Counted from the stretch's first letter, positions 12,555 through 64,000 are shown. The stretch is 64,000 nucleotides of DNA from Octopus sinensis (GCF_006345805.1 NC_043019.1:4339360-4403359), one strand, 5' to 3'. A program made the numbers and translations. The notes: generated from the letters alone by a model not told the origin.

Positions 12555-12654
12555 NNNNNNNNNNNNNNNNNNNNNNNNNNNNNNNNNNNNNNNNNNNNNN
12601 NNNNNNNNNNNNNNNNNNNNNNNNNNNNNNNNNNNNNNNNNNNNNNNNNNNNNN
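12555..12654. other. Assembly gap (100 N)
   Basis: Run of N. Confidence 1.
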
Positions 12655-13190: not shown

Positions 13191-14900
13191 CATCATGTAT
13201 GTATGTATGTAGATAGATGTATGTGTGTGGGAGTGGGTGTATGAATATATATATGTATATGCACATGTATGTAAGCATATGGATATGGAAGTAAACAGAT
13301 CAACATACAGACGGATAGTTACATAGGTTATATGAACAATCAAGCACACATGCGCAAATGAAGACTGAAACACATGACCATGTATACACATACACTTTAT
13401 TTCACACATGGACACATATGGAAACACACGTCTACACATATGGAGATGCACATCCATACATACAAACACGGTATATAGTCGCAAAACAAAGATACACTCA
13501 GACATGCACACACACGGACCGCCGAAGGTTAGCTGTTATCTACTACGTCAGTATTTGTGTATATATAACAAAGAGAGAGGAATTTCCCTCAAGTCGTACG
13601 CTACAAAGTAACTGGTTGATCGTGATCAAAATTCAGAGTTGCATCGATACACTAAAATTGAAAGCAATATGAGCAAAATTGAAGGGGGCTCATTTTGCGA
13701 ATGAAATTAACTAGACCCTGAAGAAGCAACAAACAAGATGAATTAGTTTGACACTCAAGAAAAATAGAAGAGGCTTTGACATTTCGAGTCTACGTTCTTC
13801 TCCAGAAGGAAAAGGGGAAACACACAGACACACAAGGAATCAGCTTCTAAATAAGCAAACCAATTATTTATACAGCAAGCTATGACAAGTATTCATTTAC
13901 TCACTAACTAAGCAACCAGACGACCAACTAATTTAGTAATAGTTATGTAAATAACTAATATCTAATTATGATTACGCAACCAAAATACAATCTTATGTAA
14001 ATAATTTAGGTTGACTATTCAAATTAACAGACTAATTATATATTGCCATTTACTTTTAGCTCACAATTATTGTTTTTTATTATTATTATTTAATTCGAGA
14101 ATAACGAAGAACTATATTTGAGAGATGTGGAGGCACATGGCCTAGTGGTTAGAGCAGCAGACTCGCGGTCGAGGGATCGCGGGTTCGAATCTCAGACCGG
14201 TCGATGTGTGTGTTTATGAGTGAAACACCTAAGCTCCACGCGGCTCCGGCACAAGGTAATGGTGAAACTTCTGTTGACTCTTTCGCCACAACTTTCTCTC
14301 ACTCTCTCCTCCTGCATCTTGCAGCTCACCTGCGATGGACCGGTGTCCCGTCCAGGTGGGGAACCTATACGCCAAGGAAACCGGGAAACCGGCCCTTATC
14401 AGCCAGGCATGGCTCCAGAAGGAACAAACAAATATTTGAGAGATAGTTTCAAGTAATCAGTGCCAGAACTACTAGCGTCGTCAGTGGGTGTCACGTGATG
14501 ATCACATGACACCTCCTAATGACGACGACGGCGACAGCGGGGAGTGGAGGCGCAATGATAAATGGTCTACGGCACAAATGAAATCACTTTAAACTTCCTA
14601 AAATAATATTCGAAGTGGTTTATTTCGAAGGAAATATAATTTTGAAGTGTTCATGCGTCATAATGAGAATCTGATCAAAGAATTTGCAATTAAAAAAGTA
14701 GGAGGAAATTTTACCAATATAAATAAAGTGGAAGTATACAAAAATATATATTATTTTCCACCTTACAGGTAGTTTTGTTTCGTTTTGGAAAAATAAAATT
14801 CCTTTTAAGGTTTATTATTGTTTATATATTCTGTATCAGATATAAATGGGGCACCAAAATCTTTAAAGTTTTTAGGCCCTCTATCGGTCTTAATCTAGCA

Positions 14901-19161: not shown

Positions 19162-19345
19162 GTGGGGTTTCAAACAGACAGTCAGACGGACGGACAGATG
19201 GACAGACACACAGACTGACAGTATGTGATTAGCTTCTTGATAGAATCGTATAAAAATGTTCAAAATAAGGAGAGCCATTCAACAAGTCGTTTGACAGGTT
19301 TAAAACTATTTCGATTATAATGACAATGATGATGCAATGTGCTGC

Positions 19346-26523: not shown

Positions 26524-27652
26524 TTTCTTCAAACTTTACTTTTGTTACATCTGTTCAAACAGAATCCCTCTCAAAACTTGGCTGTGTTGCTCCCCGACAA
26601 CTCCTGCTCGTGTTCAGAGATGCACATATTGCCAGTCACTAAGGAACATGCTCAAATGGTTGAGGTCAAGCAGACGACAAGCAAATCATATTGTGTGTAT
26701 GTGTGTATGTGTGCGTGTGCGTATGTGTGAGAGTTCGTATGATTCTTGTGCGTATTTTTATATATCATGCAACTCATTAGGGGTTAATAATGAAGCGTGA
26801 ATAACTGAAGGTGTATTAAAATAATTGTGTGTCCATTACTCTCCTTATCTCTCTCTTTATCTCTCTCTCTCTCTCTCACTCACTCACTCACTCACTCACG
26901 CGCACACACACAAACACACGTGTGCACATATACATACACACATATATATTATATATATATATATATATATAATATATATATATATTATAATATATATATA
27001 TTATATATATATATATATATATATCGGGCAATAATCTAGTAGCTCTGCGTCGGCAAGATTTGAAAAAATAAAGCAAAAAGTGAAAAGGATATAGCGAACT
27101 TGCTGTGAGGGGTGGACTATCCAACGTTTCGGATTCAATCCTTCGTCAAGGAGTAGAAGAAAAAGGAAGATAGAGAGAAAAAAGTCAAACAGAGTTTACA
27201 TCCTCTCAGCTTGAAAAGTTGCACCCAGTTTTTCAAGCTGAGAGGATGTAAATTCTGTTTGACTTCTACAAATATATATATATTATAATATATATATATA
27301 TTTGTAGAATAGTTGTTTATTTTTTACTTTTACCATTATAGTTTTTTACGTTTTTGTATTCTTATTGGTGTCACGTATTCTGTTTTTTGTTTGTGTACTT
27401 CGTTCGTTTTCCGTCCTCGCGTTGTATACATTCGAAGCTTTCTTCCAGGGGATCTAATGCGCTTGGCTTAGATTTCCCTTGGCGGGCTGGCCATATCGGA
27501 GCAATCTCAAGATTAATCAGCCGAAATTGCTAAGATGATCTGGTTCTTGACTGATGACTGAGGGCTTCGAATGTCCCGTCCTGTGGTTCTTGTGTCGTCT
27601 CTTTGGTGTTTCATGTTCTTGTCCATGTCTGCAATTATTTTTACTGTTTACC

Positions 27653-28479: not shown

Positions 28480-30291
28480 GTCTGTGTATATATTTTTTTT
28501 TCTTTTATTCTAAAGTTGAGGTATATTAATTGTTTGTCGTAGACCCGTTAAGAAGTGGCTTGTATTTTGTAATAAAGAGATTTTCTTACTTATTCGTTGT
28601 CTCGAGGTTGTATCGTCCCTAAATTGGTAGAGGGGGAAAATTCTGAAGTTTGGTGTTTTTTTTGTTGGCGCAAGTATCTATGTGTTGGCTAAAAGCTATT
28701 TTTCTGTTTTGGGGAATTTTTATCTGAGATCTGTGCAGGGCCATTCGTTTACGCAAACCATTTTTTTTTGTTTGCCTATGTACTGCTCTTGACACCCGGA
28801 GCAGGTTAGTGAGTATATTAGGTTCTCCGAAGCACATGTGAAGTTGCTTTTCACTGTAAAACGTTGTCCCTGTTTGAAGGAGAACTCAGAACCCTCGATT
28901 AGATAGTCGCATATCCCGCAATTGGTCTTCCACATTTTTTTACTGTCGGCTTCTGTGTTGAAGAGTGAATTCGGGCTTGTGTAAGGAGACTTTTCATGGA
29001 TCTAGGCTGTCTTTTGCTTTTTATGATCGTGTGTGTTTGGAGGATTGTGTTCATTCTGTGGTCTTTTTTTAGGAGGGGTATGTTGTGGAGGATGGTGTCG
29101 AAGGCTTCGTTATTGAGAGGGTTGTGTGTGGAGATGTATGGTAAGGCTTTTGGTTGTAAGTTTTTCTTTGATTTGGGATGTCTCAGTTCCTTGATGTTAA
29201 GTTGAAGGGCACGTTGAATGCATTTGTCAATAAGTGAAGGTGGATAGTTCCTGGTGATTAGGGTATCTTTTAGTTCTTGTAGTCGTGTGTCTCTGGTGTT
29301 TGCGTTAGAGACTATAGTGCATATCCTTTTTGCTAGATTGAAGGGGATATTCATCCTGGTGTGTCTGGGGTGGCATGAATTGAATGGAAGATATTGCTTA
29401 GAGTCTGTAGGCTTATAGTATATGTCTGTTTCTATTATATTATTAGCTTTCTTAATGAGGATATCGAGGAAGGGGAGTTGTTGTTGGCTATATTCCATCG
29501 TGAATTGGATGTTTACGTCCAGTCCGTTTAAAATTTTCTGGAATTCTATGAGTTTTTTCTATATTTTTATGCCAAAGGATGAAACAGTCATCTAGATATC
29601 TCTTCCAGTTGTTTTCTATGTAGATGGAGAAAGGGCTGCCATATCTTTCTAGAACCTTACGATACAGACTGATCTCTAGGTATCCTATGACTAGGTTGGC
29701 AAGGAGGGGGCCATTCGTGTACCCATCGCAGTCCCCGATTTTTGTCGGTAGAAGTTGTCATTGAAGGCGAAGAAGTTATTTTCCAGGATGAATTTAACCC
29801 CTTCTATCACAAATTCTTTTTTGATGCGGTGTGGTAGTTCGTTGGCGTGATTCTCTAGCCAGAATTGGATTGCCTCTAGTCCTAGGTTGTGGGGGATATT
29901 GGAGTAGGGGTTGACTACATCGAAGGATACCAGTATGGTGTTTTTGTTTATAAGTATTCGGTAGGTGATTGAGCATATCTAAGTCGTCCCTTATATAGCT
30001 TTTGACATGTTTGAGGAGTGGTTTTAACAGGGTGTCTAAAAGTTACTGAGGCGGTGGGTTTCGCATGCGGGACCTGCTATTATGGGTCTCAATTTGAGGT
30101 CATTAGGATTAGGGACTTTAATTATTTTGTCTGTAGCTATCTTGCATGCGTTGCTTATTTTTTCACTTTTGTGGATCTTAGGTATACCGTAGAATTGGCT
30201 AGTTTTACTTGTGAAATTGGTCATATAATCATATTCTTTGTCGGTTAGCCCTGCTTTGTATGGGTTTAATATGGATTTTAGTTCCCTCAAT
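28480..30291 (-). mobile_element. Penelope-like element remnant (RT + GIY-YIG)
   Basis: FYGIPKIHK..LRPIIAGP, GTAMGT-like, LPFLDILI, YYKPTDSKQYLPFNSCHP, and IYSLTCSGCQEQYIG. Contains frameshifts and stops. Confidence 0.92.
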
Positions 30292-31319
30292 ATACATACA
30301 TGTGTGTGTGTGTACATAGGTGTAGGAGTGGCTGTGTGGTAAGCAGCTTACTTACCAACCACATGGTTCCAGGTTCAGTCTCATTGCGTGTCACTTTGGC
30401 CAAGTGTCTTCTACTATGTATGTACGTACGTATGTATGTATGTATGTACGTACGTACGTATTCGTATATACATACCTGTTTCTTTATTACCCACAAGGGG
30501 CTAAACATAGAGGGGACAAACAAGGACAGACAAACGGATTAAGTCGATTACATCGACTCCAGTGCGTAACTGGTATTTAATTTATCGACCCCGAAAGGAT
30601 GAAAGGCAAAGTCGACCTCGGCGGAATTTGAACTCATAACGTAACGGCTGACGAAATACAGCTACGCATTTCGCCCAGCGTGCTAACTGTTCTGCCAGCT
30701 CGCGGCTCGTGCATAGGCACTGCGGAACTGCAGCATCCCCGTATTTCCCCTCGATATTATCGTTAACATTCAACATAATGAGCCCCTTTTTCTTTAATTC
30801 TTTCTTTATACTTATACATTATATAATCCTTAACCATAATGTCAGTAGCTATACCTTAGTTTATAAAAAAAATACAAAAATCCTTGTGCGCTTCACAGTT
30901 CCAGCGACGCGGTGTTTGGTTGTTGTGTGCATGCTCACATGTCCGAGATAGGAAGCTGCACGCTAGAAAGAGAGAGCACTGTCGTTCACGCAGTGCCGAC
31001 CCTGGTGTGCTGGTGAAAGGTAGTGTTTTCTTTTTGACTCCGCGTGTGCTTAAAAACGTGTTTATATTCTGGAATGTGATAAAGTAAAGAATTAGATTAT
31101 CCTGCTTCCAGCTACAATGCTGCTGCGAGGATTCGAAAAATAGGGCAGATTCTCCTCCCCCTATTTTGTTATTTGGTGGGGGGAATTTTTGAGAAACAAG
31201 GGGGAATTCGCGGCGGTGTTCAGTGAACAAATTAAACACACTACCCGGCAGTGGCTAAAACGCGAACCGATCAAGTTTCTATATACATTTTCTTATTATA
31301 TGTTTGTTTCCTTTTACTA

Positions 31320-33134: not shown

Positions 33135-33700
33135 TTGTGTTGTCCGGAAAGTTCGTGCCGATTTGTTGTAGCTTACTTTTCCATTTATTTTATAACATGG
33201 TTGAGTTCATAAAATAGGATTTGACTACACCTCCATTTAGAGCACAGTTTAAGCTATCTTTTCGTGGAAGAAGGTTTATGTTCCTATAACCTGTGTTAAT
33301 TCTGTAACCCTTTAAAATGGAAGATAAGAAAGTTCATTTTCGACACTTGATGCTTTGGGAACCAGACAAAAATTGCTGCAGCTCGGCTGGGATGTGTTAC
33401 CCCACCCTCCATATTCACCAGATATTGCTCCTTCGGATTTCCACTTATTCAGGTCTGTGCAGAATAGTCTTAATGGTAAAAATTTCAATTCCTTGGATGA
33501 CGTAAAAAGATACCTTGATGAATTCTTTGCCATGAAGCCACCTCAATTCTGGGAAGAGGGCATTTTCAAGTTAAAGGAAAGATGGAGATGCATTGTGCAA
33601 CAAAATGGTTCATATTTGGTTGATTAAAAATGTAATGGCAAGTATTTATTGACCTTTTTCTTTCCTTTAAAAATCGGCACGAACTTTCCGGACAACCCAA
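33135..33700 (+). mobile_element. Internally deleted mariner element
   Basis: TIR TT(G)GGTTGTCCGGAAAGTTCGTGCCGATTT. N-terminal MEDKKVHFRHLMLW is fused to C-terminal LPHPPYSPDIAPSDFHLFRS. Confidence 0.92.
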
Positions 33701-35182: not shown

Positions 35183-36897
35183 TAATCATCGTTGTTACAC
35201 ATTCATATCTATGTGTATACGTAGGCATACGTGTGTAGAATACATCCCCACTTTTGGCACTATTTTGTTAGTGAACAGTATGAACTGTGTCTAAAAGTAT
35301 ACATGTATCACTACGCTGAATGTGGACAGTTCGTGTAACGTGAAAAGTAAATAAACACGTAAAACAATAACAATGCCTTCATTTGAGTTGTCTTTCCCAT
35401 TAGAACGAATTAACACATAACAATCGTATTCCAGTTTCCTTCACTTTTCAATGAGTTTTTATAATGGGAAGGCAAGGTTTACGATATCGGAAGAATATCG
35501 TCTTCTTCCATCATCTGTTTCTTCATCGTGTAGTCCAGGCTTCCGACAGGCAAAGAGAGAAAACTTCAAGTACAAATGCTATTTACAACTGGTTTATTTA
35601 CAGGTTTTACAGGATAGGTGAAGTGTGCTGCTCTCAGCTACCATCTTTAGCTTTTTGCGTTGTGCAATAGCTCCGTTAGTGCGGGCGCATTACCTCTGGA
35701 GATGCAACCTACAGACAGGACCAGCCAGTGGTGGTGTTCAGCCAGTGATGCTGCGAAGTGATGCCGTCAAAAATGAGAGAGGTCTGAATCGGGTTTTCCC
35801 TTTATATAGTTTTCCATCACGAGCTTCGTTGTGATCTGGCGCATGGCAAATGGATGCAGGTGAGGCTGGACTCCAGTCTCGGAGATGGCAATGGCTGGAC
35901 CTATCTGTAGGTTGTATCTCCAGATTGGAATATGGCGCTGACTGCTTGTGCCGCTACAGAGTAATAGATGAGTGACTATCTTTCCATACAGACACAACAC
36001 AGGCTATATCTTCAGGGGGTTTTTTTGGATAAAATTTTCAGAAATAACCCAGTAAGTTTACCATTAATTCCGTGAAATATTTACTGGTTCCGCTTGTGTA
36101 AATAAATAAATAAATAAATAAGCGTCACATTTGACGAAGTAATCTGAATGCTAGAGAGTTAAACAAACAACGATGGCGCCCCCACCACCGGCACCCCTGT
36201 CATCATCATCATCGTCATCATCAGCAGCAGCAGCAGCAACACTATTTTAACATTGTCAAATGTCTTGTTTGTGGAGGCGCGTGGCTTAGTGGTTAGGGTG
36301 TCAGCATCATGATCGTAAGATTGTGGTTTCGATTCCTGGACCGTGCGACGCGTTGTGTTCTCGAGCAAACACTTCATTTCACGTTGCTCCAGTCCACTCA
36401 GCTGGCAGAAATGAGTAACGCTGCGATGGACTGGCGTCCTGTCCAGCTGGCGAACACATATGCCATTGAAACCGGGAAACCGGGCCCATGAGCCTGGCTA
36501 GGCTTTAAAAGGGCGTGTTTATTTTGGAGGCGCAATGGCCCAGTGGTTAGGGCAACAGATTCGCGATCGGAGGATCGCGGTTTCGATTCCAAGACTGGGC
36601 GTTGTGTGTATTTATTGAGCAAAAACACCTAAAAGCTCCACGAGGCTCTGGCAGGGGTTGGTGGCGACCCTGTTGTACTCTTTCGCCCCAACTTCCTCTC
36701 ACTCTTTCTTCTTGTTTCTTGAGTAACTCTGTGATGGACTGGTGTCCCGTCCAGCTGGGGGGAACACATATGCCACAGAAACCGGGAAACTGGGCCCATG
36801 AGCCTGGCTAGGCTTGAAAAGGGCGCATAAATAATTTTTTTATTTTAAATGCCTTGTTTACTCGCTGTCGTTATTTTTATGTGTTTTATGAGGTCAT

Positions 36898-47149: not shown

Positions 47150-48890
47150 CTCATTAGGGAGAGAATTTGTTTAGATGAAATGCAGTTCGGTTTTGTACCA
47201 GGTAGAAGCACCACTGATGCTATATTCCTGGTCCGACAACTGCAGGAGAAGTACCTAGCTAAAGATATAAACCCCTCTACATAGCTTTTGTAGACTTGGA
47301 GAAAGCCTTTGACAGGGTTCCCCGTTCCCTTATCTGGTGTGGTCGATGCGGAAACTTGGAGATTGAAGAATGGCTAATAAGGGCTGTACAGGCTCTATAC
47401 AGAGGGCTGTCAGCAAGGTTAGGATTGGCAACGAATATAGTGAAGAATTCCGGGTAGGTAGAAGTAGGTGTGCACCAGGGCTCAGCCCTCAGTCCCCTTT
47501 TATTCATCATAGTCCTTCAGGCAATAGCAGAGGAATTCAAAACGGGATGCCCCTGGGAGCTCCTCTATGCCGATGACCTAGCTCTCATAGCAGAATCACT
47601 ACCGGAACTAGAAGAGAAATTTCAGGTGTGGAAGCAAGGTTGGAATCAAAGGGCCTTAGAATAAATGTAGCAAAGACCAAAGTATTAGTAAGCAGCAAGA
47701 GGTACTCAGCACACATCCCCTCGGGTAGGTGGCCCTGCTCAACCTGTAGGAAAGGTACAGGTAGAAACTCCATAAGATGCACCCAATGTAAGTTATGGAC
47801 ACATAAGAGGTGCAGCAACATTAAAGGGAAATTAACAGATAAGATAGCTTTCATGTGCGGCAGATGCACAGGGACAATAGACACAACAGACACTCAGAAA
47901 ACAGATTCCATCACACTCCAGGGAGAGAAACTAGAAGTAGTTGATAGTTTCCGCTACCTGGGAGACCAAGTTAGTAGCGGAGGTGGATGCACAGAGAGTA
48001 TCACCACTAGAATACGAATAGCCTGGGCAAAGTTCAGAAAGCTCCTACCCCTACTGGCAACAAAAGGTCTCTCCCTCAGAGTAAAAGGTAGATTGTATGA
48101 TGCATGTGTGCGAACTGCCATGCTTCACGGTATGAAACATGGGCTGTGACTGCAGAAGACATGTGTAGACTTGAAAGAAATGAAGCTAGCATGATCCGCT
48201 GGATGTGTAGTGTCAGTGTGCACGCAAAACAGAGTGTAAGTATCCTGAGAGAAATGCGGATATAAGAAGCATCAGATGTGGTGTGCAAGAGCGACGCTTG
48301 CGATGGTATGGTCATGTGCTGCGGATGGATGAAGAGAGATGTGTGAAGAAGTGCCACTCCCAAACAGTTGAAGGTATCAGGGGGAGAGGTAGACCCAGGA
48401 AGACATGGGATGAGGTGGTCAAGCATGACCTCAGAGCATTGGGCCTCACTGAGGCAATGGCGAAGGACCGAGATCTCTGGAGATATGCTGTGACTACAAA
48501 GACCCGGGCTGCTTTCTGCAGCAATTCCACATACCCCCTACCCATTCTAAGTACCCCGGATCCCCAAAGTACCCTGGATCCCCAAAGTACCCCGATCCCC
48601 AAAGTACCCCGGACCTCGTTGCCCCCGTGCCGCTGACACGTTAAAATGCTCGAACCGATCGTGACGATGCCGGACCCTCCGGCCCCTGTGCAGGTGGCAC
48701 GTAAAAAGCACCCAATCCACTCACGGAGTGGTTGGCGTTAGGAAGGGCATCCAGCCGTAGAAACTCTGCCAGATTCAGACTGGAGCCTGGTGTGGCCCCT
48801 GGCTTCCCAGACCCGGTCAAACCGTCCAACCCGTGCTAGCGCGGAAAGCGGACGTTAAACGATGATGATGATGATGATGATGATATATAT
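47150..48890 (+). mobile_element. 5'-truncated RTE-clade LINE with frameshifted RT
   Basis: QFGFVPGRSTTDAIF, FVDLEKAFDRVP, GVHQGSALSPLLF, LLYADDL, RLRWYGHV, GRGRPRKTW, then 3' UTR and (GAT)n tail. Confidence 0.95.
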
Positions 48891-49810: not shown

Positions 49811-49985
49811 CATACATATATACGATGGGCTTCTTTCAGTTTGCGTCTACCAAATCCACTCACAAGGCATTGGTCGGCCCGGGGCTATAGCAGAAGACAT
49901 TTGCCCAAGATGCCATGCAGTGGGACTGAACCCGGAACCATGTGGTTGGTTAGCAATCTACTTACCACACAGCCACTCCTGCGCC
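49555..49985 (-). mobile_element. SINE family A
   Basis: Full-length copy. Confidence 0.85.
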
Positions 49986-49986
49986 T

Positions 49987-50640
49987 GTATTTTTGCAGAA
50001 TATTTCTCTTGAATTTTTTCACATTGTGCTTCAGGTTTACCATTGTTTGATATTCTTCTGCAATGGTCTGGCTCACTGGATTAAGTCTTGGTTCACTGGA
50101 TTAAGTCTTGGTTCACTGGATTAAGTCTTGGTTCACTTGCTCCATTTTTGAGAGAGTCCTTGCTGGAATTTCTCAATCTTTCGTCGCCGTAAGGCCTTGT
50201 TCAAAGATAAGGGATTTAAACATTTCCTGAGTGAGTCCCTGAAATTTAAATTTTTCACACATACGGTTGACTACTCCGGCGTATGTAATAAAGTTATCAT
50301 CGTCATTTCTTGCTAAATTCCAACACTCCATTCAACAAAGTTTTAACACAAAAGATCTTTGATAGTAATTCAATAGTTTCTTAGAAACAAATCTCACTCG
50401 ACTTTTTGGGCAATATAAAGTTACAGTAGTGTTCATGCTCAGCCAGAGCAACCTTGCGCAGTAATAGCCTCACTTTCTCCTCATCTGACCATGACCTGCA
50501 ATCTTTAAAAATTCCTTGTACCTTCTATAGTATGCAGGAAACATAATACCCTCCTCTAGATTATAAGTGAATTCAGAAATTGAGTTTGCCACACTGTCTG
50601 GCAACCTTTTCAATAGTCTTGACTCTTGTAATATTATTAC
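49987..50640 (-). pseudogene. Degenerate Gypsy-type gag fragment
   Basis: PDSVANSISEFTYNLEEG...DCRSWSDEEKVRLLLRK...HYCNFILPKK...YAGVVNRMCEKFK...MFKSLIF.QGL, with stops and frameshifts and a 20-bp x3 internal repeat at 50073-50136. Confidence 0.8.
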
Positions 50641-50999
50641 CAGTCTGAATATACCAGTGGCGCATTCAGACTTCTAAATAAATCATTCACCCTGTTTTTG
50701 TCATGGAGAAAATTTCTCAATGTGGACAAGTCCAAATGTACCACTGGCATAACCAAACTAATGACAACATTGCATTTATACACACCACTGCTTAGTGCTT
50801 CCACCCCATAACTTAAATTCAATGTAAAAGCATACATAAATGATATATATAGGGAGAGTTTACGAGAAAAACAAAAGACGAAGACAGGTGGTGTACAAAA
50901 CAAACAGATGTATTAGTATAACGCTCAGGAATAGGATCTTTTTGAAGAGAATGCCTATAAGGTTCTCCCTCGCCACCCTGATACTAAAATAGTATTATT

Positions 51000-51260
51000 G
51001 TAGTACCTTATGTACTTGGAGTACCTAAGCTGCCATTGTCGTGGGTATTGATATTGTGGTACCATATACATCATTGTTGCAGTACCTTATATACTTCTGT
51101 GGCTACTGATGTTACGGTAACTAATATAGTGTTGTTGTAGTAACTTACATACTTGTAGTACCTAAACCACCATTGTTGTGGCTATTGATATTGTGGTACC
51201 TTATATATTCATTGATGCGGTACCTTATACACTGTTGTGATTACTGATGTAGACAAATGG
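51000..51260 (+). repeat. ~137-bp tandem duplication with GTACCTTA subrepeats
   Basis: Units start near 51000 and 51137. Confidence 0.65.
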
Positions 51261-51699
51261 CGTAAGTACACCAAAATCAGCTTGCTGTGCCACCTACCCA
51301 GAGTAAAATAGGAATCAAAAGGATCCACAGGTAAAAAAAAAATGGCTGATAGCCACTGATTTAGAGTAATCAACTGAGCTAAACTTTGTCTCATTATTTT
51401 TAAACACTCCAGTATAATTAATAAACAACATAGACAATAGTTTACACATTATTTTATTCTTTAACTTTCTCTGAAAAGTGCACAAGTAATATTTATTGTT
51501 TAATCACCAATGAGCTGAGCTCTAGTTGTGGAGGAAACCAGCCCTTATGAGCCAGGCATGGCTCGAGAAGGAACAAGAGAAAGACACAGTCTGTTCTATT
51601 CCATCTCTCCAGTATGTCCTTGTACTTGTGCTTACAAAGTACTGTTATTTCTTACAGTTTGAGGATGCAGAGCTTTACTATGAGATCCAGAATGTGAAT

Positions 51700-52145
51700 G
51701 AAGGGTAGGGGCAGACCCAGGAAAACATGGGACGAAGTGGTGAGAAAGGATCTTCAGACGCTGGGCCTCACTGAGGATATGACAAGGGACCAGAAGATAT
51801 AGGGATTTTCTGTACATGATAAGATATGTCAAGCTAAGTAAAAATGCTGTCTTCCACAGATACAGGCTCGTCCTTTTGGATGCCGGTGCCACTTAAAAAG
51901 CACCCATGCCAGTGCTGTGTAAATGCACCAATGTTGGCGGCACGTAAAAAGCAACCCAGGGCACTCTGTTAAGTGGTTAGTGTTAGGAAGGGCATCCAGC
52001 CACCAAAGCCATGTCACAGCAGACAGTTGGGAGTCTGGAGAGCTCCCTGCTACCCAGCTCCCTGCTAGCCAGCCCCCTGACAAAGCATCCAACCCACGAC
52101 AACATGGAAAGCAGACATTAAATGATGATGAAGATGATGATGATG
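51700..52145 (+). mobile_element. RTE 3' end fragment
   Basis: GRGRPRKTWDEVVRKDLQTLGLTE, 3' UTR and (GAT)n tail. Confidence 0.8.
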
Positions 52146-52228
52146 TGCCTCAAGATCAAATAAATTCAAAATCACAGGTCAATAGTATTGGAGTGACCAG
52201 ATAGAAATGTCTTTAGCATCAGACTTAC

Positions 52229-52327
52229 CTGATAGAACTGTCTGTAAAGTGGTCTATCATAAAAGCTTTCTGATGAAAATTCTTCATTCACATTCTGGAT
52301 CTCATAGTAAAGCTCCGCATCCTCAAA
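52229..52327 (-). CDS. Coding exon of CCDC17-like gene (FEDAELYYEIQNVNEEFSSESFYDRPLYRQFYQ)
   Basis: TTTCTTACAG acceptor, CAG|GTAAGT donor, 99 nt, phase 0-0. Resembles the recalled CCDC17 AELFLRLVN...EYQYP segment. Confidence 0.8.
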
Positions 52328-52971
52328 CTGTAAGAAATAACAGCACTTTGTAAGCACAAGTACAAGGAAATACTGGAGAGATGGAAGAGAACAGATTCTG
52401 TCTGGAGTTGGCCGTAATGAAATTTAAACTCAGTACATGAAAAGAAGTAACTATAACCAGTTATTTGGTTGCTCTACCAAATCTGCACAAACTTCTACAT
52501 TAATAGAGTAGGTGGTAAAGAAATAGGTATTTCATCTGCTGCTACGTTCTGAGTTCAAATTCTGCCGAGGTCGACTTTGCCTTTCATCCTTTTGGGGGTC
52601 GATTAAATAAGTACCAGTTATGAACTGGTGTCGATATAATCGACTTAATCCGTTTGTCTGTCCTTGCTTGTCCTCTCTGTGTTTAGCCCCTAGTGGGTAA
52701 TAAAGAAATAAAATTTAATTCTCATCAGTAATGCTTTCTCCATTGCAGGTGGTGAAGTTAATTTCTACCCCATCAGTATATATAGATTTTATCATTGGTG
52801 GGGAGGTTATCTCCCCTGTCAGAAAATAGAAAATGTGCTTTCTGCAACTACAGAGTTCTTTGACTCTTATTTCTAGCAATGTTGGTGCTCCTTCCACCCT
52901 TCATCACATTTTAGTGACGATGAATTATTTCCTTTTTGGTTTTAAATTGTGTCTGGTCACCATCATTATTT

Positions 52972-53564: not shown

Positions 53565-53784
53565 CTGGTTCCGTGCTTCGAATTCAGCTGCCGAAAGCTT
53601 AGCGTTGATGGGGAGTGTCTTTAGGGGGACACTGAATTTTCCAAGCTGTGGCTGATGGTATCTATTGAAGAGATGAATCCGTGTCCAGGCCTGGGTATAC
53701 AGACTGTTCCGTTCTGGTGATTGACTGGTGTTCATGGCAATTTGAACCTCAACCACAACACACAGTTTGGAACTGTAGATCTTT
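53565..53784 (-). CDS. Coding exon of CCDC17-like gene (KIYSSKLCVVVEVQI...AWTRIHLFNRYHQPQLGKFSVPLKTLP...ARNQ)
   Basis: Long pyrimidine tract with CTAG acceptor, CAG|GTATGT donor, 220 nt, phase 2-0 matching the upstream exon. Resembles the recalled CCDC17 LVLELQ...GW..L.LFD...GRW.LPLRALP segment. Confidence 0.8.
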
Positions 53785-55168: not shown

Positions 55169-55396
55169 CTGGGCACTATCTGCTTGTTCACAAACGTTGC
55201 AAATCCTTGGTATTTGACGTTGTTCTGTCCGTCTTGCCATTTGTTGCGATAATCACAGACCACCGTTGGAGACATGGTAAGGTCTTCCTCTGCACTGACT
55301 GAACTGGTGCCATTAAACCAGTGTAAGAGCAGCCGACAAATGGTAGCCTCTTCTGGTAGGCCATCAATGAAGTTGTATTGAATGTAGAGACCATCC
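55169..55396 (-). CDS. Coding exon of CCDC17-like gene (DGLYIQYNFIDGLPEEATICRLLLHWFNG...ATFVNKQIVPR)
   Basis: TTCTTCAG acceptor, AG|GTATTA donor, 228 nt, phase 2-2. The peptide resembles the recalled CCDC17 motifs GFVIFYDFL.GL and KQPVPR. Confidence 0.75.
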
Positions 55397-55796
55397 CTGA
55401 AGAATTTTGATGAAGACAAAAATTACACAGAGTAACAAAATTTTTTTTTTTTGGGGGGGGGGGGTCAGAAAGTGTTACTTCCTGTTTGTTTCTGTCTAGA
55501 AATCAAAGGAAATGACTACTATTCCCTTCACACTTTGTTTTCATGATCTCTTTTACTCTTTTACTTGTTTCAGTCATTTGACTGTGGCCAAGCTGGAGCA
55601 CTGTCTTTAGTCGAGCAAATTGACCCCAGGACTTATTCATTGTAAGCCTAGTACTTATTCTATCGGTCTCTTTTGCCAAACCACTAAGTTACGGGGACGT
55701 AAACACACCAGCATCGGTTGTCAAGCAATGTTGGGGGGGACAAACACTGACGCACAAATGCATACATACACACATACATATATAGATATATATATC

Positions 55797-56830
55797 ATCA
55801 TCATCATCATCATCATCATTTAACGTCCGCTTTCCATGCTAGCATGGGTTGGACGGTTCAACTGGGGTCTGGGGAGCCCGAAAGCTGCACCAGTCCAGTC
55901 AGATCTGGCAGTGTTTCTACAGCTGGATGCCCTTCCTAACGCCAACCACTCCGAGAGTGTAGTGGGTGATTTTATGTGCCACCGACACAGGTGCCAGACG
56001 AGGCTGGCAGACGGCCACGCTCGGATGGTGATTTTTATGTGCCACGACACAGGTGCCAGATGAGGCTGGCAAACGGCCACGCTCGGATGGTGTTTTTATG
56101 TGCCACCGACACAGGTGCCAGACGAGGCTGGCAGACGGCCACGCTCGGATGGTGTGATTTTTATGTGCCACCGACACGGTGCCAGGACGAGGCTGGCAGA
56201 CGGCCACGCTCGGATGGTGATTTTTATGTGCCACCGACACAGGTGCCAGATGAGGCTGGCAGACGGCCACGCTCGGATGGTGATTTTTATGTGCCACCGA
56301 CACAGGTGCCAGACGAGGCTGGCAGACGGCCACGCTCGGATGGTGATTTTTATGTGCCACCGACACAGGTGCCAGATGAGGCTGGCAAACGGCCACGATC
56401 GGATGGTGCTTGTTACGTGCCCACAGCACAGAGGCCAGTCGATGCGGTACCGGCTACGCCACGTTCGGATGGTTTTCTGTGTGCCACGTGCCACCGGCAC
56501 TGGTACCACAAGATACAAATTCCATTGATGTTCATCTTATTTATTTTTGATTTGTTTTGATTTTGATTTTCACTTGCCTCAACAGGTCTTCACAAGTGTC
56601 ACAAGAAGGAAGGTATCACAGGTGGACTGACTACGTCCCAGGTAGGGGCCATGGGTTATGGCCTGACTAGTCTTGCCGGGTCTTCGGATGGTTTTTTATG
56701 TGCCACCGACACAGGTGCTAGATGAGGCTAGCGAACGGCCACGATCGGATGGTGTTTGTCATGTGCCCACCGCACTGACTACAGCACTGATGGATTTCTT
56801 GTGTGCCACAGGCACTGGTACCACAAGATA
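55797..56830 (-). mobile_element. RTE 3' UTR with expanded ~62-bp minisatellite
   Basis: (ATC)n tail at 55797 and about 7 units of TTTATGTGCCACCGACACAGGTGCCAGACGAGGCTGGCAGACGGCCACGCTCGGATGGTGA. Confidence 0.8.
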
Positions 56831-58198: not shown

Positions 58199-58323
58199 GG
58201 ATATCGGTCATGGTGGTATTTACTTTACGATGGAGTTAGGCCTAACGATAACAACAGTTGTCTCCCCCACACACATACACAATGCTTTGGGCATATAAAG
58301 AAACCATAAAAGAAGTAACGTAC

Positions 58324-58370
58324 CTGCTTGACTGACTGTACATGCTTTCTTTGCCTGGCTTCACGACTAT
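58324..58370 (-). CDS. Candidate small exon (IVVKPGKESMYSQSS-R) of CCDC17-like gene
   Basis: Strong CAG|GTACGT donor but weak AATAG acceptor. Phase 0 start and phase 2 end bridge exons 61314-61456 and 55169-55396 exactly. Confidence 0.4.
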
Positions 58371-60168: not shown

Positions 60169-61313
60169 TTAAGGTCCTTTGGTACCAGGTTTTGTTTCTA
60201 CGTGTAGAATTTCTTTTCTAGTTCTACTACAGATTCCACTATGAGAACAAGGTCATCAGCATACAGTAGTTCCCAATGGTAAAAAAAAACAAAAAAAACA
60301 TTACCCTTTTCAAGCCTAGCCAGGCTCATGGGCCCGGTTTCCCAGTTTCTGTGGCGTATATGTTACCCCCAGCTGGACGGGACACCAGTCCATCGCAGCG
60401 TTACTCTAGAAACAGGAAGAGAGAGTGAGAGAAAGTTGTGGTGAAAGAGTACAACAGGGGTCACCACCACCCCCTGCCGGAGCCTCGTGGTGCTTTTAGG
60501 TGTTTTTGCTCAATAAACACACACAACGCCCGGTCTGGGAATCGAAACCGGGATCCTCCGACTGCGAGCCCGCTGCCCTAACCACTGTGAGTTCCCAATG
60601 GTAGCCAGTTTTAAATTCCTCTGATATAGCCTGTACAATGATGAATAAGAGGAGACTGAGAACTGAGCCCTAGTGAACTCCTACCTGTATTCTGAATTCA
60701 TTGGTGTACTCATTGTAACTCACACCTTACTGACAACACCCCTATATATGGCTCGAACAGCTTCCACAAGAAATTCGTGTACTCCTGGCTTTCTCACAGA
60801 CCATCAGATCACAAAGTGGGGGACTCAGTCAAAGACTCATTCCAAATCAACAAACACCAGGTATAATGGTTTACAACTTGGCTAAATACTTGACCTGCAG
60901 TAAAAAGCATCAGGAGTACTTCTTGTTACCTTCGGTAACAAGGCATCACACCTTGGAGAACTAACTACATATAGTTAGTTTATGTAGTATAGTTATTATT
61001 TTAAAGGTAAATGATAGAGTACATCTTATGGAGTTTCTACCTACACCTTTTCTACAGATCGAGCAGGGGCCATCTACCTGAAGAGATTTACGCTTTGTCT
61101 ACCTTCCTACTTATTAAGATTTTGGTTTTTGCTAGGTTGACTCTAAGGCCCTTCGATTCCACTGATGCTTGTCACTGACTTTTTCTAGCAGATTGTGTGA
61201 CCCCACAGTAAACCCCTTAATTGCTTATCTCTATTCTATCCCAGTTGGTGGGAGAAGTATAATGAACATATCGTGGTGCAACATTAATATCATCAGGGTG
61301 GTATTTTCCTCAC

Positions 61314-61456
61314 CTGACCCCATCGACTCCCAGACACAATCTTATCCAAGTCACGTTGATGTCTTTCCAGTTCTTTCTGTTGTTGAATAATTTCAATCTT
61401 TTGGTGAAGAAGCAACAAATTCTTCCGGTGATCTTTTTCCAGTGTTTCAATGTCAT
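61314..61456 (-). CDS. Coding exon, coiled-coil segment (DIETLEKDHRKNLLLLHQKIEIIQQQKELERHQRDLDKIVSGSRWGQ) of CCDC17-like gene
   Basis: TTTTCAAAG acceptor, CAG|GTGAGG donor, 143 nt (2 nt + 47 codons), open frame with heptad-like L/I and E/Q/K content. Confidence 0.7.
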
Positions 61457-61558
61457 CTTTGAAAATTTATATCGTTGTAGATTTTTGGTGAGAGAAAAAA
61501 GAAATGAATATATTATAATGATAATAAAAATAAACATAATAATAATAAAAATAATAAA

Positions 61559-61777: not shown

Positions 61778-62139
61778 TATTAATAAAAATGCCTTGATGC
61801 AGTACCAGGCAGTGGCTTCTTATCTTAACTGATTGGATGTGTTATCATGTACATTGTTCTGTCTTGGTATAAAAGATGGGCTACAGCAAATATTCTGCTC
61901 AATACCAGATTTGCTTGTCGGTTGTTTGACCGTAACCAGTTGAGCATGTCCCTTAGTGACTGACGATATGTGCATCTCTGATCACGAGCAGAAGTAGTGG
62001 GGGAGCATCATAGCCATGTGTTGAGAGGGATTCTTTGGGGTTTGAATAATTCACCTCTGGAAACAGGGGTGGTTCATTCAACATCCTTAAACAACCCTTA
62101 TTTAGGGACCTTTTGAGTGGGATGGGCTACTTTCGATCG

Positions 62140-62383
62140 GGTTTCATGGCAAAAAATTCATCAAGGTATCTTTTTACGTCATCCAAGGAATTGAAATTTT
62201 TACCATTAAGACTATTCTGCAGAAACCTGAATAAGTGGAAATCCGAAGGAGTAATATCTGGAGAATATGGAGGGTGGGGTAACACATCCCAGCCAAGCTG
62301 CAGCAATTTTGTCTGGTTCCCAAAGCATCAAGTGCTGAAAATGAACTTTCTTATCTTCCCTTTTAAAGGGTTACAGAATTAAT
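62140..62383 (-). mobile_element. Fragment of the same deleted mariner derivative
   Basis: Reverse complement of about 33300-33540, with the same TGGGAACCAGACAAAA deletion junction. Confidence 0.85.
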
Positions 62384-63789: not shown

Positions 63790-64000
63790 ATCATCATCAT
63801 CATCATCATGATCGTTTAACGTCCGCTTTCCATGCTAGCATGGGTTGGACAGTTCAACCGGGGTCTGGGAAGCCAGAAGGCTGCACCAAGCCCAGTCAGA
63901 TCTGGCGGTGTTTCTACAGCTGGATGCCCTTCCTAATGCCAACCACTCCGTGAGTGTAGTGGGTGCTTTTTATGTGCCACCGGCACAGGTGCCATACGAT
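63790..64000 (-). mobile_element. RTE 3' UTR fragment running off the window edge
   Basis: (ATC)n followed by GTTTAACGTCCGCTTTCCATGCTAGC. Confidence 0.8.

What the first reader, a model, noticed from the sequence alone, without database searches (positions are those of the whole stretch)
51582..52403. Inverted copy of an exon's 3' splice site and 5' half in the next intron
51582-51703 is a ~122-bp reverse-complement copy of 52282-52403 (acceptor region plus the first 46 nt of exon 52229-52327) with few mismatches, fused to an RTE 3' end. In the minus-strand pre-mRNA it lies about 525 nt downstream of the donor and can pair with the exon. This is the classic geometry of an ADAR editing-complementary sequence, and coleoids are known for extensive A-to-I recoding. 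The duplex would also mask the acceptor of a 99-nt frame-neutral exon. It suggests that retrotransposon template switching can create an editing or splicing control element de novo.
Basis: partly seen in the sequence, partly recalled or inferred. Interest (0 to 1): 0.8.

Follow-up and report, generated by a model that had tools for sequence, protein, structure and literature searches.

The report
Retrotransposon-made inverted exon copy in octopus gene
In one octopus lineage, a jumping gene that landed just after a conserved exon of a CCDC17-like gene also copied 122 bases of that exon and its splice site backwards, so the transcript can fold into a long hairpin; the event is real and datable, but no RNA data show that the hairpin does anything.

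Summary
Window 51582-51703 is a 122-nt, 95% reverse-complement copy of 52282-52403, the only such pair in the window.

The source arm is the last 76 nt of an intron, the acceptor, and the first 46 nt of a real 99-nt coding exon. That exon is the last conserved exon of an octopus CCDC17-like gene on the minus strand. It is 99% identical in protein to O. bimaculoides XP_052831906.1.

On the + strand the copy is the middle of a three-part, same-orientation mosaic:
- a SINE 3' end;
- the gene fragment;
- 437 nt of an RTE-like LINE 3' end with a (GATGAT)n tail.

O. bimaculoides has the empty site. Homology stops exactly at the LINE tail, 88 nt into what is there a 97-nt intron. Neither O. bimaculoides nor Argonauta has an inverted copy. 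The window also lacks about 292 nt that hold the O. bimaculoides terminal exon.

The element is therefore a lineage-specific by-product of a complex LINE insertion, made by template switching or snap-back synthesis.

The predicted gene-sense RNA forms the full duplex (about -208 kcal/mol). ADAR hyper-editing or masking of the acceptor is plausible but untested. There is no conservation or compensatory change that would indicate a selected function.

The parts
52229..52327 (-). 99-nt coding exon (FEDAELYYEIQNVNEEFSSESFYDRPLYRQFYQ), phase 0-0. It is the last conserved exon of a CCDC17-like gene. Acceptor AG is at 52329-52328 and donor GT at 52228-52227.
   Evidence: The three-exon chain is open in frame. 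It is 99% identical over 182 aa to O. bimaculoides XP_052831906.1. The motif AELY..I.N is conserved in CCDC17 relatives from other animals. All 4 differences from O. bimaculoides are synonymous. The donor is the best-scoring one in the window.
52282..52403 (-). Source arm: the last 76 nt of the upstream intron (branch-point/polypyrimidine region and acceptor) plus the first 46 nt of the exon.
   Evidence: It is orthologous to L003 27258-27379 in O. bimaculoides.
51582..51703 (+). Inverted copy. It reads gene-sense on the + strand, so it is antisense within the gene's transcript. It is the middle piece of the mosaic insertion.
   Evidence: It keeps the ancestral (O. bimaculoides) base at 4 of the 6 sites where the arms differ, and has 2 changes of its own, one of them CpG to CpA in the exon part.
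51704..52140 (+). 5'-truncated 3' end of an RTE-like non-LTR retrotransposon, antisense to the gene. It holds the C-terminal ORF remnant GRGRPRKTWDEVVRKDLQTLGLTEDMTRDQKI*, a 3' UTR and a (GATGAT)n tail at 52122-52145.
   Evidence: It aligns to the longer copy at 48381-48882. tblastn of LINE ORF relatives hits 51701-51832. It is absent from the orthologous O. bimaculoides site.
52141..52145 (.). TGATG, shared between the target (O. bimaculoides ...ACATCA|) and the LINE tail repeat. This is the microhomology at the priming junction. The nick was on the minus (gene-sense) strand.
   Evidence: Empty-site alignment.
52141..52228 (-). The retained first 88 nt of the ancestral 97-nt intron.
   Evidence: with 5 differences from O. 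bimaculoides over these 88 nt (about 94% identity). In O. bimaculoides 9 more nt (CTGTTACAG) lead into the terminal exon.
51527..51581 (+). 3'-terminal part of a roughly 305-nt SINE, possibly starting at 51502 with an internal deletion. It has the same orientation as the LINE, and its natural 3' end abuts the gene fragment.
   Evidence: 93% identical to the end of the full copy at 14126-14431, whose own target duplication ATATTTGAGAGAT defines that end.
50603..51526 (.). 924 nt of unknown origin, with no counterpart in O. bimaculoides. It carries the first poly(A) hexamers on the gene strand after the donor (51504, 51497, 51458).
49985..50602 (-). Gag-like retroelement shared with O. bimaculoides (L003 27813-28401). 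Its first ~292 nt, which hold the O. bimaculoides terminal exon, are missing in the window.
   Evidence: The colinear chain continues for 10 kb.
53565..53784 (-). Upstream coding exon of the same gene (220 nt).
55169..55396 (-). Upstream coding exon of the same gene (228 nt).
58323..58370 (-). Small upstream coding exon. Boundaries are approximate and taken from the tblastn match.
61311..61466 (-). Upstream coding exon. Boundaries are approximate and taken from the tblastn match.

Best explanation
The inverted copy is a fossil by-product of one complex LINE insertion, not an evolved regulatory element.

Shown:
- After this lineage split from O. bimaculoides, an RTE-like LINE inserted by target-primed reverse transcription into the gene-sense strand. 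The site is 88 nt past the donor of the last conserved exon of a CCDC17-like gene.
- Only 437 nt of LINE were copied.
- At that point the sequence continues with 122 nt of the gene's own sense strand, taken from 137-258 nt upstream of the nick. It then continues with the 3' end of a SINE.
- About 292 nt of target, including the exon that O. bimaculoides uses as its terminal exon, are missing.

Inferred:
- The growing cDNA switched template at the LINE truncation point. The new template was either the unspliced CCDC17-like pre-mRNA, followed by a SINE RNA, or its own resected DNA strand (snap-back).
- I favour the RNA route slightly, at about 55:45. All three pieces lie in one orientation, and the SINE piece ends at its natural 3' end.

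How it would work now (inferred):
- Any transcript that runs from the exon to at least 51582 can fold the acceptor region and the first 46 exon nt into a 122-bp duplex. The first poly(A) hexamers on the gene strand come only after the copy.
- If the upstream intron has already been spliced out, a 46-bp duplex remains.
- Such a duplex is the usual substrate for promiscuous ADAR hyper-editing. It could also slow use of the acceptor.
- I expect low-level, clustered, non-adaptive editing where the gene and ADAR are co-expressed, and no selected function.
For: - Repeat and junctions.
- The exon and gene are real and under purifying selection: and (25 synonymous against 2 nonsynonymous codon differences).
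- Empty site in O. bimaculoides, exactly at the LINE tail with TGATG microhomology.
- No inverted copy within 10 kb in O. bimaculoides or in the Argonauta locus.
- The terminal exon and 292 nt are missing, while the downstream sequence stays colinear.
- Differences polarised by the outgroup: 4 on the source arm, 2 on the copy, 5 states shared by both arms against O. bimaculoides. The arms have therefore drifted independently since one old duplication.
- SINE 3' end abutting the copy.
- Predicted fold: the long-range duplex is in both the MFE and the centroid structure (z = -16). The arms alone give -207.7 kcal/mol and the exon-only 46 bp give -82.2 kcal/mol.
- First poly(A) hexamers at 51504, 51497 and 51458.
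- Precedents: L1 insertions with local deletions, inverted duplications, templated insertions and same-orientation template-switch concatenates (PMC11702581); editing that mainly hits young-repeat dsRNA, with most coding hits lying in hyper-edited clusters (PMC9989829); active RTE-class LINEs in Octopus (PMC9115989).
Against: - No target-site duplication was found, so a single event is inferred rather than proven.
- The 924 nt at 50603-51526 are unexplained and could mark further, separate events.
- The SINE fragment could have been there before the LINE arrived.
- Junction microhomology at 51703/51704 cannot be measured without this LINE subfamily's consensus.
- No RNA evidence of any kind is available. 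The gene's 3' end in this species is unknown, so co-transcription of both arms is inferred only.
- The repeat has survived for roughly two-thirds of the time since the split from O. bimaculoides. That is compatible with neutrality but does not exclude a function.
It was not tested against a curated repeat library.
Confidence: 0.7

Rival explanations
1. One reading: the copy now works as an editing-complementary sequence or splicing control element. It would direct ADAR recoding of FEDAELYYEIQNVNE and/or regulate use of the acceptor, and would be kept by selection.
For: The geometry and energetics fit. The arms cover the branch-point region, polypyrimidine tract, AG and 46 exon nt. Two Tyr codons (UAC, UAU) and two Asn codons have ADAR-favoured 5' neighbours. 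The host is a coleoid. The repeat has persisted for a long time at only about 5% divergence. In the gene-sense RNA, 2 of the 6 differences are G.U wobbles.
Against: It is absent from O. bimaculoides and Argonauta. None of the 6 differences is compensated, and both arms diverge at about the local neutral rate. A long near-perfect duplex predicts hyper-editing rather than selective recoding (PMC9989829). The encoded residues are conserved and under purifying selection, so heavy recoding would more likely be harmful. Transcription across the copy is unproven. From general knowledge, mammalian CCDC17 is expressed mainly in testis and ciliated tissue, whereas coleoid editing is concentrated in neural tissue.
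Confidence: 0.12
2. A DNA-level inverted duplication unrelated to retrotransposition, for example replication template switching, with the LINE and SINE pieces later inserting next to it by chance.
For: No target-site duplication brackets the mosaic. The 924 unexplained nt show the region has had other rearrangements.
Against: The copy's proximal end coincides to the base with the LINE's 5' truncation point. Its distal end coincides with a SINE's natural 3' end. All three pieces share one orientation. The source lies within 260 nt of the priming nick.
Confidence: 0.08
3. An assembly artefact, such as a fold-back chimeric read.
For: The window comes from a scaffolded assembly and has a 100-N gap at 12555-12654.
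Against: The arms differ at 6 sites. The outgroup shows changes on both arms, which an artefactual duplicate would not have. There are no Ns between or near the arms.
Confidence: 0.02
4. The terminal inverted repeats of a DNA transposon or MITE spanning 51582-52403.
For: Two 122-nt inverted arms lie 578 nt apart.
Against: One arm is the orthologous intron/exon sequence of a conserved gene. There are no other copies in the window, L003 or L004. There is no flanking target duplication. The interior is a LINE 3' end plus the rest of the exon.
Confidence: 0.01

Closest known systems
Classic exon/intron editing-complementary sequences (e.g. GRIA2 Q/R site with its ECS in the downstream intron). This comparison is from general knowledge.
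   Same: An exon segment pairs with a complementary stretch a few hundred nt downstream in the same pre-mRNA. Editing would have to precede removal of that stretch.
   Different: Classic ECSs are short, imperfect, evolutionarily conserved and site-selective. This duplex is 122 bp and near-perfect, includes the 3' splice site, is lineage-specific, and has no editing evidence.
Young inverted-repeat retroelement pairs, which are hyper-edited by ADAR and can cause loop-out exon skipping (PMC9989829; PMC13019027, title and abstract only)
   Same: Long, recent, near-perfect intramolecular dsRNA created by retroelement activity inside a gene. The expected outcome is clustered, promiscuous editing and possible interference with splicing.
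   Different: The paired sequences are not two transposon copies. They are the gene's own exon/acceptor and a retrotransposition-made copy of it, so one arm is coding.
Complex L1 insertions: target deletions, local inverted duplications, templated genomic insertions and template-switch concatenates (PMC11702581). Also L1 chimeras with cellular RNAs (PMC4476161 and bioRxiv 10.1101/2025.02.02.635956, titles and abstracts only).
   Same: A 5'-truncated LINE with foreign sequence at the truncation point, pieces concatenated in one orientation, loss of target DNA, no target duplication, and a source next to the primed end.
   Different: This one is a germline-fixed event in an octopus, made by an RTE-like element with a microsatellite tail. 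The captured piece spans an intron/exon boundary of the host gene itself, only 137 nt from the nick. Classic chimeras capture processed RNAs from elsewhere and carry target duplications.
L1-associated inversion of SLCO1B3 exon 4 in Rotor syndrome (PMC7005217, abstract)
   Same: A LINE insertion in an intron is associated with an inverted arrangement of a neighbouring exon and disturbed splicing.
   Different: That case is an inversion of the only exon copy and is pathogenic. Here the original exon stays intact and an extra partial copy is inverted.

Membership tests
ADAR editing-complementary sequence (ECS) | A non-coding stretch complementary to the exon that forms a duplex in the same RNA | tested here: met
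   The predicted MFE and centroid structures both contain the 122-bp duplex. The arms give -207.7 kcal/mol and the exon-only 46 bp give -82.2 kcal/mol. These are predictions only.
ADAR editing-complementary sequence (ECS) | Both partners are co-transcribed before the complement is removed | not testable with these tools
   No RNA data are available. The only indirect evidence is that the first poly(A) hexamers on the gene strand lie beyond the copy. The 3' end of the gene in this species is unknown.
ADAR editing-complementary sequence (ECS) | A-to-I editing observed in the paired exon | not testable with these tools
   No reads are available. A literature search for the gene identifiers found nothing.
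ADAR editing-complementary sequence (ECS) | Conservation of the complement, or compensatory substitutions | tested here: not met
   The copy is absent from O. bimaculoides and Argonauta. None of the 6 arm differences is compensated.
5'-truncated non-LTR (RTE-like) retrotransposon insertion | Homology to the LINE C-terminal ORF and 3' UTR, ending in the family's simple-repeat tail | tested here: met
   The assignment to the RTE clade itself was not tested against a repeat library. Pfam gave no clade-level hit.
5'-truncated non-LTR (RTE-like) retrotransposon insertion | An empty orthologous site in a related species | tested here: met
   The O. bimaculoides alignment breaks exactly at the tail, with 5-nt microhomology.
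5'-truncated non-LTR (RTE-like) retrotransposon insertion | A target-site duplication | tested here: not met
   No duplication brackets either 51582-52146 or 51502-52146 (inspection). Instead about 292 nt of target are missing.
LINE chimera by RT template switching onto cellular RNA | The 5' part is in the same orientation as the LINE part, fused at the LINE truncation point | tested here: met
   The gene fragment and the SINE fragment both read sense on the + strand, as the LINE does.
LINE chimera by RT template switching onto cellular RNA | The 5' part is a processed RNA from another locus, and the whole chimera is flanked by a target duplication | tested here: not met
   The captured piece crosses an intron/exon boundary and comes from 137-258 nt away. 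There is no target duplication.
Retrotransposition-associated local inverted duplication (snap-back or templated insertion) | An inverted copy of sequence adjacent to the primed end, joined to the cDNA end, with target loss | tested here: met
   The geometry matches the class described for L1 in PMC11702581.
Retrotransposition-associated local inverted duplication (snap-back or templated insertion) | Microhomology at the switch junction | tested here: inconclusive
   The nearest LINE copy is only about 77% identical at the junction. Between 1 and 4 nt (AG/AAG) is possible.
DNA transposon / MITE | Multiple copies with terminal inverted repeats and target duplications | tested here: not met
   It is a single pair, and one arm is orthologous gene sequence.
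CCDC17-like gene (host) | Homology across the CCDC17 C-terminal region | tested here: met
   HMMER search: 51 proteins at E <= 0.001. The precomputed Pfam families CCDC17_C and CCDC17_middle_coil hit the octopus and Argonauta orthologues. See also the alignment.

The most novel reading that the evidence does not exclude
The insertion created, in a single step, a working editing site-complement pair. In this octopus lineage only, the conserved AELYYEI motif of the CCDC17-like protein would be recoded (for example Tyr to Cys, Asn to Ser), or the acceptor would be regulated through the duplex. That would be a dated natural example of a retrotransposon reverse transcriptase writing a new ADAR substrate onto a coding exon, and a possible general route by which coleoids gain recoding sites.
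Probability: 0.1. Interest if true: 0.7.

Novelty: new member of a known kind. Interest (0 to 1): 0.4.

Why it matters
This is a clean case, polarised by an outgroup, of a LINE insertion that did three things at once:
- it copied part of the host exon and its splice site in reverse;
- it deleted the gene's previous terminal exon;
- it left a long hairpin in the transcription unit of a gene that remains under purifying selection.

It extends to an RTE-like element in a cephalopod germline the complex-insertion outcomes so far documented mainly for human L1 in cell culture and tumours. It also offers a natural with/without comparison against O. bimaculoides. That comparison can test whether a newly born exon-complementary repeat is enough to bring ADAR editing onto a coding exon. 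Without RNA data it remains a structural curiosity and is most likely neutral.

Tried and rejected
- **Word-indexed protein searches.** Searches with the exon ORF and with the upstream exon found nothing. This proved uninformative: the index returned nothing even though the matching O. bimaculoides protein exists, and a LINE ORF found only 7 short contigs.
- **Rotatin hit.** A weak Pfam RTTN_N hit (E = 0.27) disappeared when the exon chain was used, and the CCDC17 homology contradicts it.
- **Pfam on the LINE pieces.** It gave only PHD and AT-hook hits, with no clade assignment.
- **Target-site duplications.** I looked around both possible insertion boundaries and found none.
- **Downstream exons.** tblastn of 58 relatives against window 1-52228 found no further CCDC17-like exon. 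The O. bimaculoides and Argonauta terminal exons are not homologous to each other, and neither is present in the window.
- **Exact-sequence look-ups.** Two window ORFs found no other assembly, so the window's species was not identified. GCA_024449705.1 could not be traced in the literature.
- **SINE head.** ARAGORN does not call a tRNA in the SINE head, so 'tRNA-like' rests only on box-like motifs seen by eye.
- **Editing of the template.** The copy shows no A-to-G change relative to the ancestral state, so there is no sign that an edited RNA was the template. Only 2 copy-specific changes exist, so this is not informative.
- **Rejected readings.** The MITE, assembly-artefact and chance explanations were rejected for the reasons given under the rival explanations.

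Full report
**1.

The sequence and the repeat finder show inverted arms at 51582-51703 and 52282-52403. They are 122 nt long, 95% complementary and 578 nt apart. The pairwise alignment shows sharp ends and 6 mismatches. In a self-BLAST of the whole 64-kb window this is the only pair of its kind (E = 8e-52). It is therefore neither chance nor a dispersed repeat.

**2. The exon is real, and the host gene is CCDC17-like**

- The segment 52327-52229 on the minus strand is 99 nt, open in one frame only. It has the acceptor ttcttacag| and the donor CAG|GTAAGT, the best-scoring donor in the window.
- It joins in frame with two upstream candidate exons, 55396-55169 and 53784-53565, to give 182 open codons.
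- Word-indexed protein searches found nothing, but an exhaustive HMMER search did. The chain is 99% identical over its full length to residues 226-407 of a 439-aa protein. That protein is XP_052831906.1, 'uncharacterized protein LOC106880555 [Octopus bimaculoides]'.
- The chain is also 52% identical to an Argonauta hians protein, and 25-30% identical to proteins from Lingula and other animals.
- The precomputed Pfam families on the octopod proteins are CCDC17_middle_coil and CCDC17_C.
- In an alignment with relatives, the first half of the focal exon encodes the conserved ..AELY..I.N motif. Several relatives end a few residues after this exon's equivalent.
- In both O. bimaculoides and Argonauta it is the penultimate coding exon, followed by short terminal exons that are not homologous to each other.
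- Against O. bimaculoides the three exons differ at 25 synonymous and 2 nonsynonymous codons. All 4 differences in the focal exon are synonymous. The gene is therefore under purifying selection.
- Introns are only about 90-92% identical to O. bimaculoides. The window thus comes from a different, unidentified Octopus-like species.

**3. What lies between and beside the arms**

Reading the + strand, antisense to the gene, there are three pieces:

- **SINE fragment, 51527-51581.** It is 93% identical to the last ~50 nt of a ~305-nt SINE. The full copy at 14126-14431 has its ends defined by the target duplication ATATTTGAGAGAT. The fragment runs to the SINE's natural 3' end, and weaker similarity may extend back to 51502.
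- **Gene fragment, 51582-51703**, in gene-sense orientation.
- **LINE 3' end, 51704-52140.** This is the 3' end of a non-LTR retrotransposon. It holds the ORF remnant GRGRPRKTWDEVV...DQKI*, a 3' UTR and a (GATGAT)n tail. It aligns to the longer copy at 48381-48882, which has the same tail.

All three pieces share one orientation. The clade was not tested against a repeat library.

**4. The sister species has the empty site**

- The O. bimaculoides locus (L003, CM046623.1:24567129-24604756) aligns with the window from the exon through the donor and 88 nt of intron.
- Homology then stops exactly at the LINE tail. The window continues ...ACATCA|TCATCATCTTCATC... (the tail, antisense). O. bimaculoides continues ...ACATCA|CTGTTACAG|TGTATTC..., which is 9 more nt of a 97-nt intron and then its terminal exon.
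- The shared TGATG/CATCA is the kind of overlap expected if the nicked gene-sense strand primed on the tail repeat.
- Neither the 10 kb downstream in O. bimaculoides nor the Argonauta locus holds an inverted copy of the exon region.
- The O. bimaculoides terminal exon and about 292 nt (L003 27521-27812) have no counterpart in the window.
- Orthology resumes at window 50602 = L003 27813, inside a gag-like retroelement, and continues colinearly for another 10 kb.
- That terminal exon lies at the 5' edge of the shared retroelement, and a second partial copy sits 1.1 kb away. It is therefore transposon-derived.
- The window has 1538 nt where O. bimaculoides has 292. These are the three-part mosaic plus 924 nt (50603-51526) whose origin I could not explain.

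**5. Dating and polarity**

Using O. bimaculoides as outgroup, the 6 differences between the arms split as follows:

- 4 are changes on the source arm, all in its intronic part.
- 2 are changes on the copy, including a CpG to CpA change in the exon part.

Five further sites are shared by both arms against O. bimaculoides. Arm-to-arm divergence is 4.9%, against 5.7-7.4% between either arm and O. bimaculoides. The duplication is therefore lineage-specific but old, roughly two-thirds to three-quarters of the way back to the split, with wide error. Independent drift on both arms also rules out an assembly artefact. None of the 6 differences is compensated.

**6. Origin**

The nick was on the minus strand, so the cDNA grew leftwards from 52141. 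After 437 nt of LINE, the new strand continues as a copy of the gene's sense strand. It enters at exon nt 46 and runs back across the acceptor into the intron. Two templates fit this:

- **The unspliced pre-mRNA**, reached by RT template switching and followed by a jump onto the 3' end of a SINE RNA.
- **The same DNA strand**, exposed by resection. The cDNA tip snaps back 137 nt behind the nick and copies 122 nt before release and end-joining.

Experimental L1 work describes exactly these outcomes at insertion sites (PMC11702581). They include deletions, inverted duplications, templated genomic insertions, hairpin self-annealing of the cDNA end, and same-orientation concatenates attributed to template-switching RT. 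The one-orientation mosaic and the SINE piece ending at its natural terminus tilt me slightly towards RNA templates. Sequence alone cannot decide.

The absent target duplication fits a deletion-associated insertion. Because of it, the single-event model is inferred rather than proven.

**7. What it may do now**

- Folding the gene-sense RNA from 52430 to 51560 puts the complete long-range duplex in both the minimum-energy and the centroid structures. The energy is -377 kcal/mol, against -240 +/- 8.5 for shuffles (z = -16).
- The arms alone give -207.7 kcal/mol, with 4 mismatches and 2 G.U pairs. The 46 exon nt alone give -82.2 kcal/mol.
- The duplex covers the branch-point region, the polypyrimidine tract, the AG and codons FEDAELYYEIQNVNE.
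- Adenosines with ADAR-favoured 5' neighbours would give Tyr to Cys (twice) and Asn to Ser (twice). Most others follow G, which is a poor context (combined with general knowledge of ADAR neighbour preference).
- On the gene strand, the first AATAAA/ATTAAA hexamers after the donor are at 51504, 51497 and 51458, just beyond the copy and the SINE piece. Any transcript that passes the donor without splicing probably includes both arms.
- Because the old terminal exon is gone, the copy may now sit in a read-through 3' UTR rather than in an intron.
- Comparative editome work finds that A-to-I editing mainly hits dsRNA from young repeats. It also finds that most coding hits lie in hyper-edited clusters (PMC9989829).
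- My expectation for a 122-bp near-perfect duplex is therefore promiscuous, probably non-adaptive editing wherever the gene and ADAR are co-expressed. None of this is shown.

**8. Verdict**

The functional reading is plausible but untested. It is weakened by the lack of conservation, the absence of compensatory change, and the uncertain transcript structure.

The element is a new member of known kinds: a LINE-insertion-associated local inverted duplication that produces an intragenic inverted repeat. Its value is as a natural test case that RNA-seq could settle quickly.

Noticed in passing
L004 (Argonauta hians) about 19200-19300: About 20 nt after the donor of the orthologous exon, the Argonauta intron carries a LINE C-terminal coding remnant (WNNVVKEDLRKL...GGSWRAAVQKR) in gene-sense orientation. 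This looks like an independent LINE landing next to the same exon.
   Followed up: no
L003 (O. bimaculoides) 27519-27628 and 28685-28760: The annotated terminal exon of O. bimaculoides LOC106880555, including its acceptor, lies in the 5' edge of a gag-like retroelement. It has a second 87% copy 1.1 kb downstream, so the gene's annotated C-terminus is transposon-derived. An 11-nt tandem duplication (GTTACAGTCAA) frameshifts the element's ORF.
   Followed up: partly
window 52141-52146 / L003 27519-27521: The LINE's 3' junction in the window coincides within about 2 nt with the 5' boundary of the older shared retroelement. Either the same target site was used twice or this is a coincidence.
   Followed up: partly
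window 50603-51526: These 924 nt have no counterpart in O. bimaculoides and no other copy in the window. They include two 137-nt tandem units (50983-51250, 83-84% identical). Their origin is unknown.
   Followed up: partly
window 47577-48882 (+): A longer copy of a related LINE. It has a YADD-containing RT remnant, a PHD-type zinc finger (Pfam E = 8e-6), the same C-terminal motif and the same (GATGAT)n tail. Further related 3' ends lie at 55796-55994 and 63792-63992 (minus strand).
   Followed up: partly
window 14126-14431, 36525-36822, 60305-60586 and others: An abundant ~305-nt SINE family with A/B-box-like motifs at its head. ARAGORN does not call a tRNA in it. A second very abundant SINE, with the recurring translation ...RRRSGCVVSSLLTNHMVPGS..., is scattered through the window.
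   Followed up: partly
window 12555-12654: A run of 100 N, which is a scaffold gap.
   Followed up: no
window 28700-30350 (-), 33328-33624 (+), 62130-62327 (-): Other transposon ORF remnants: a reverse-transcriptase-bearing element with several long ORFs, and mariner-type transposase fragments (...PPYSPDI.PSDFHLF...).
   Followed up: no
The word-indexed protein search returned no candidate for an exon that is 100% identical to a stretch of XP_052831906.1. The exhaustive HMMER library found that protein at once. Negative results from the indexed search are therefore not informative for this eukaryotic window.
   Followed up: yes
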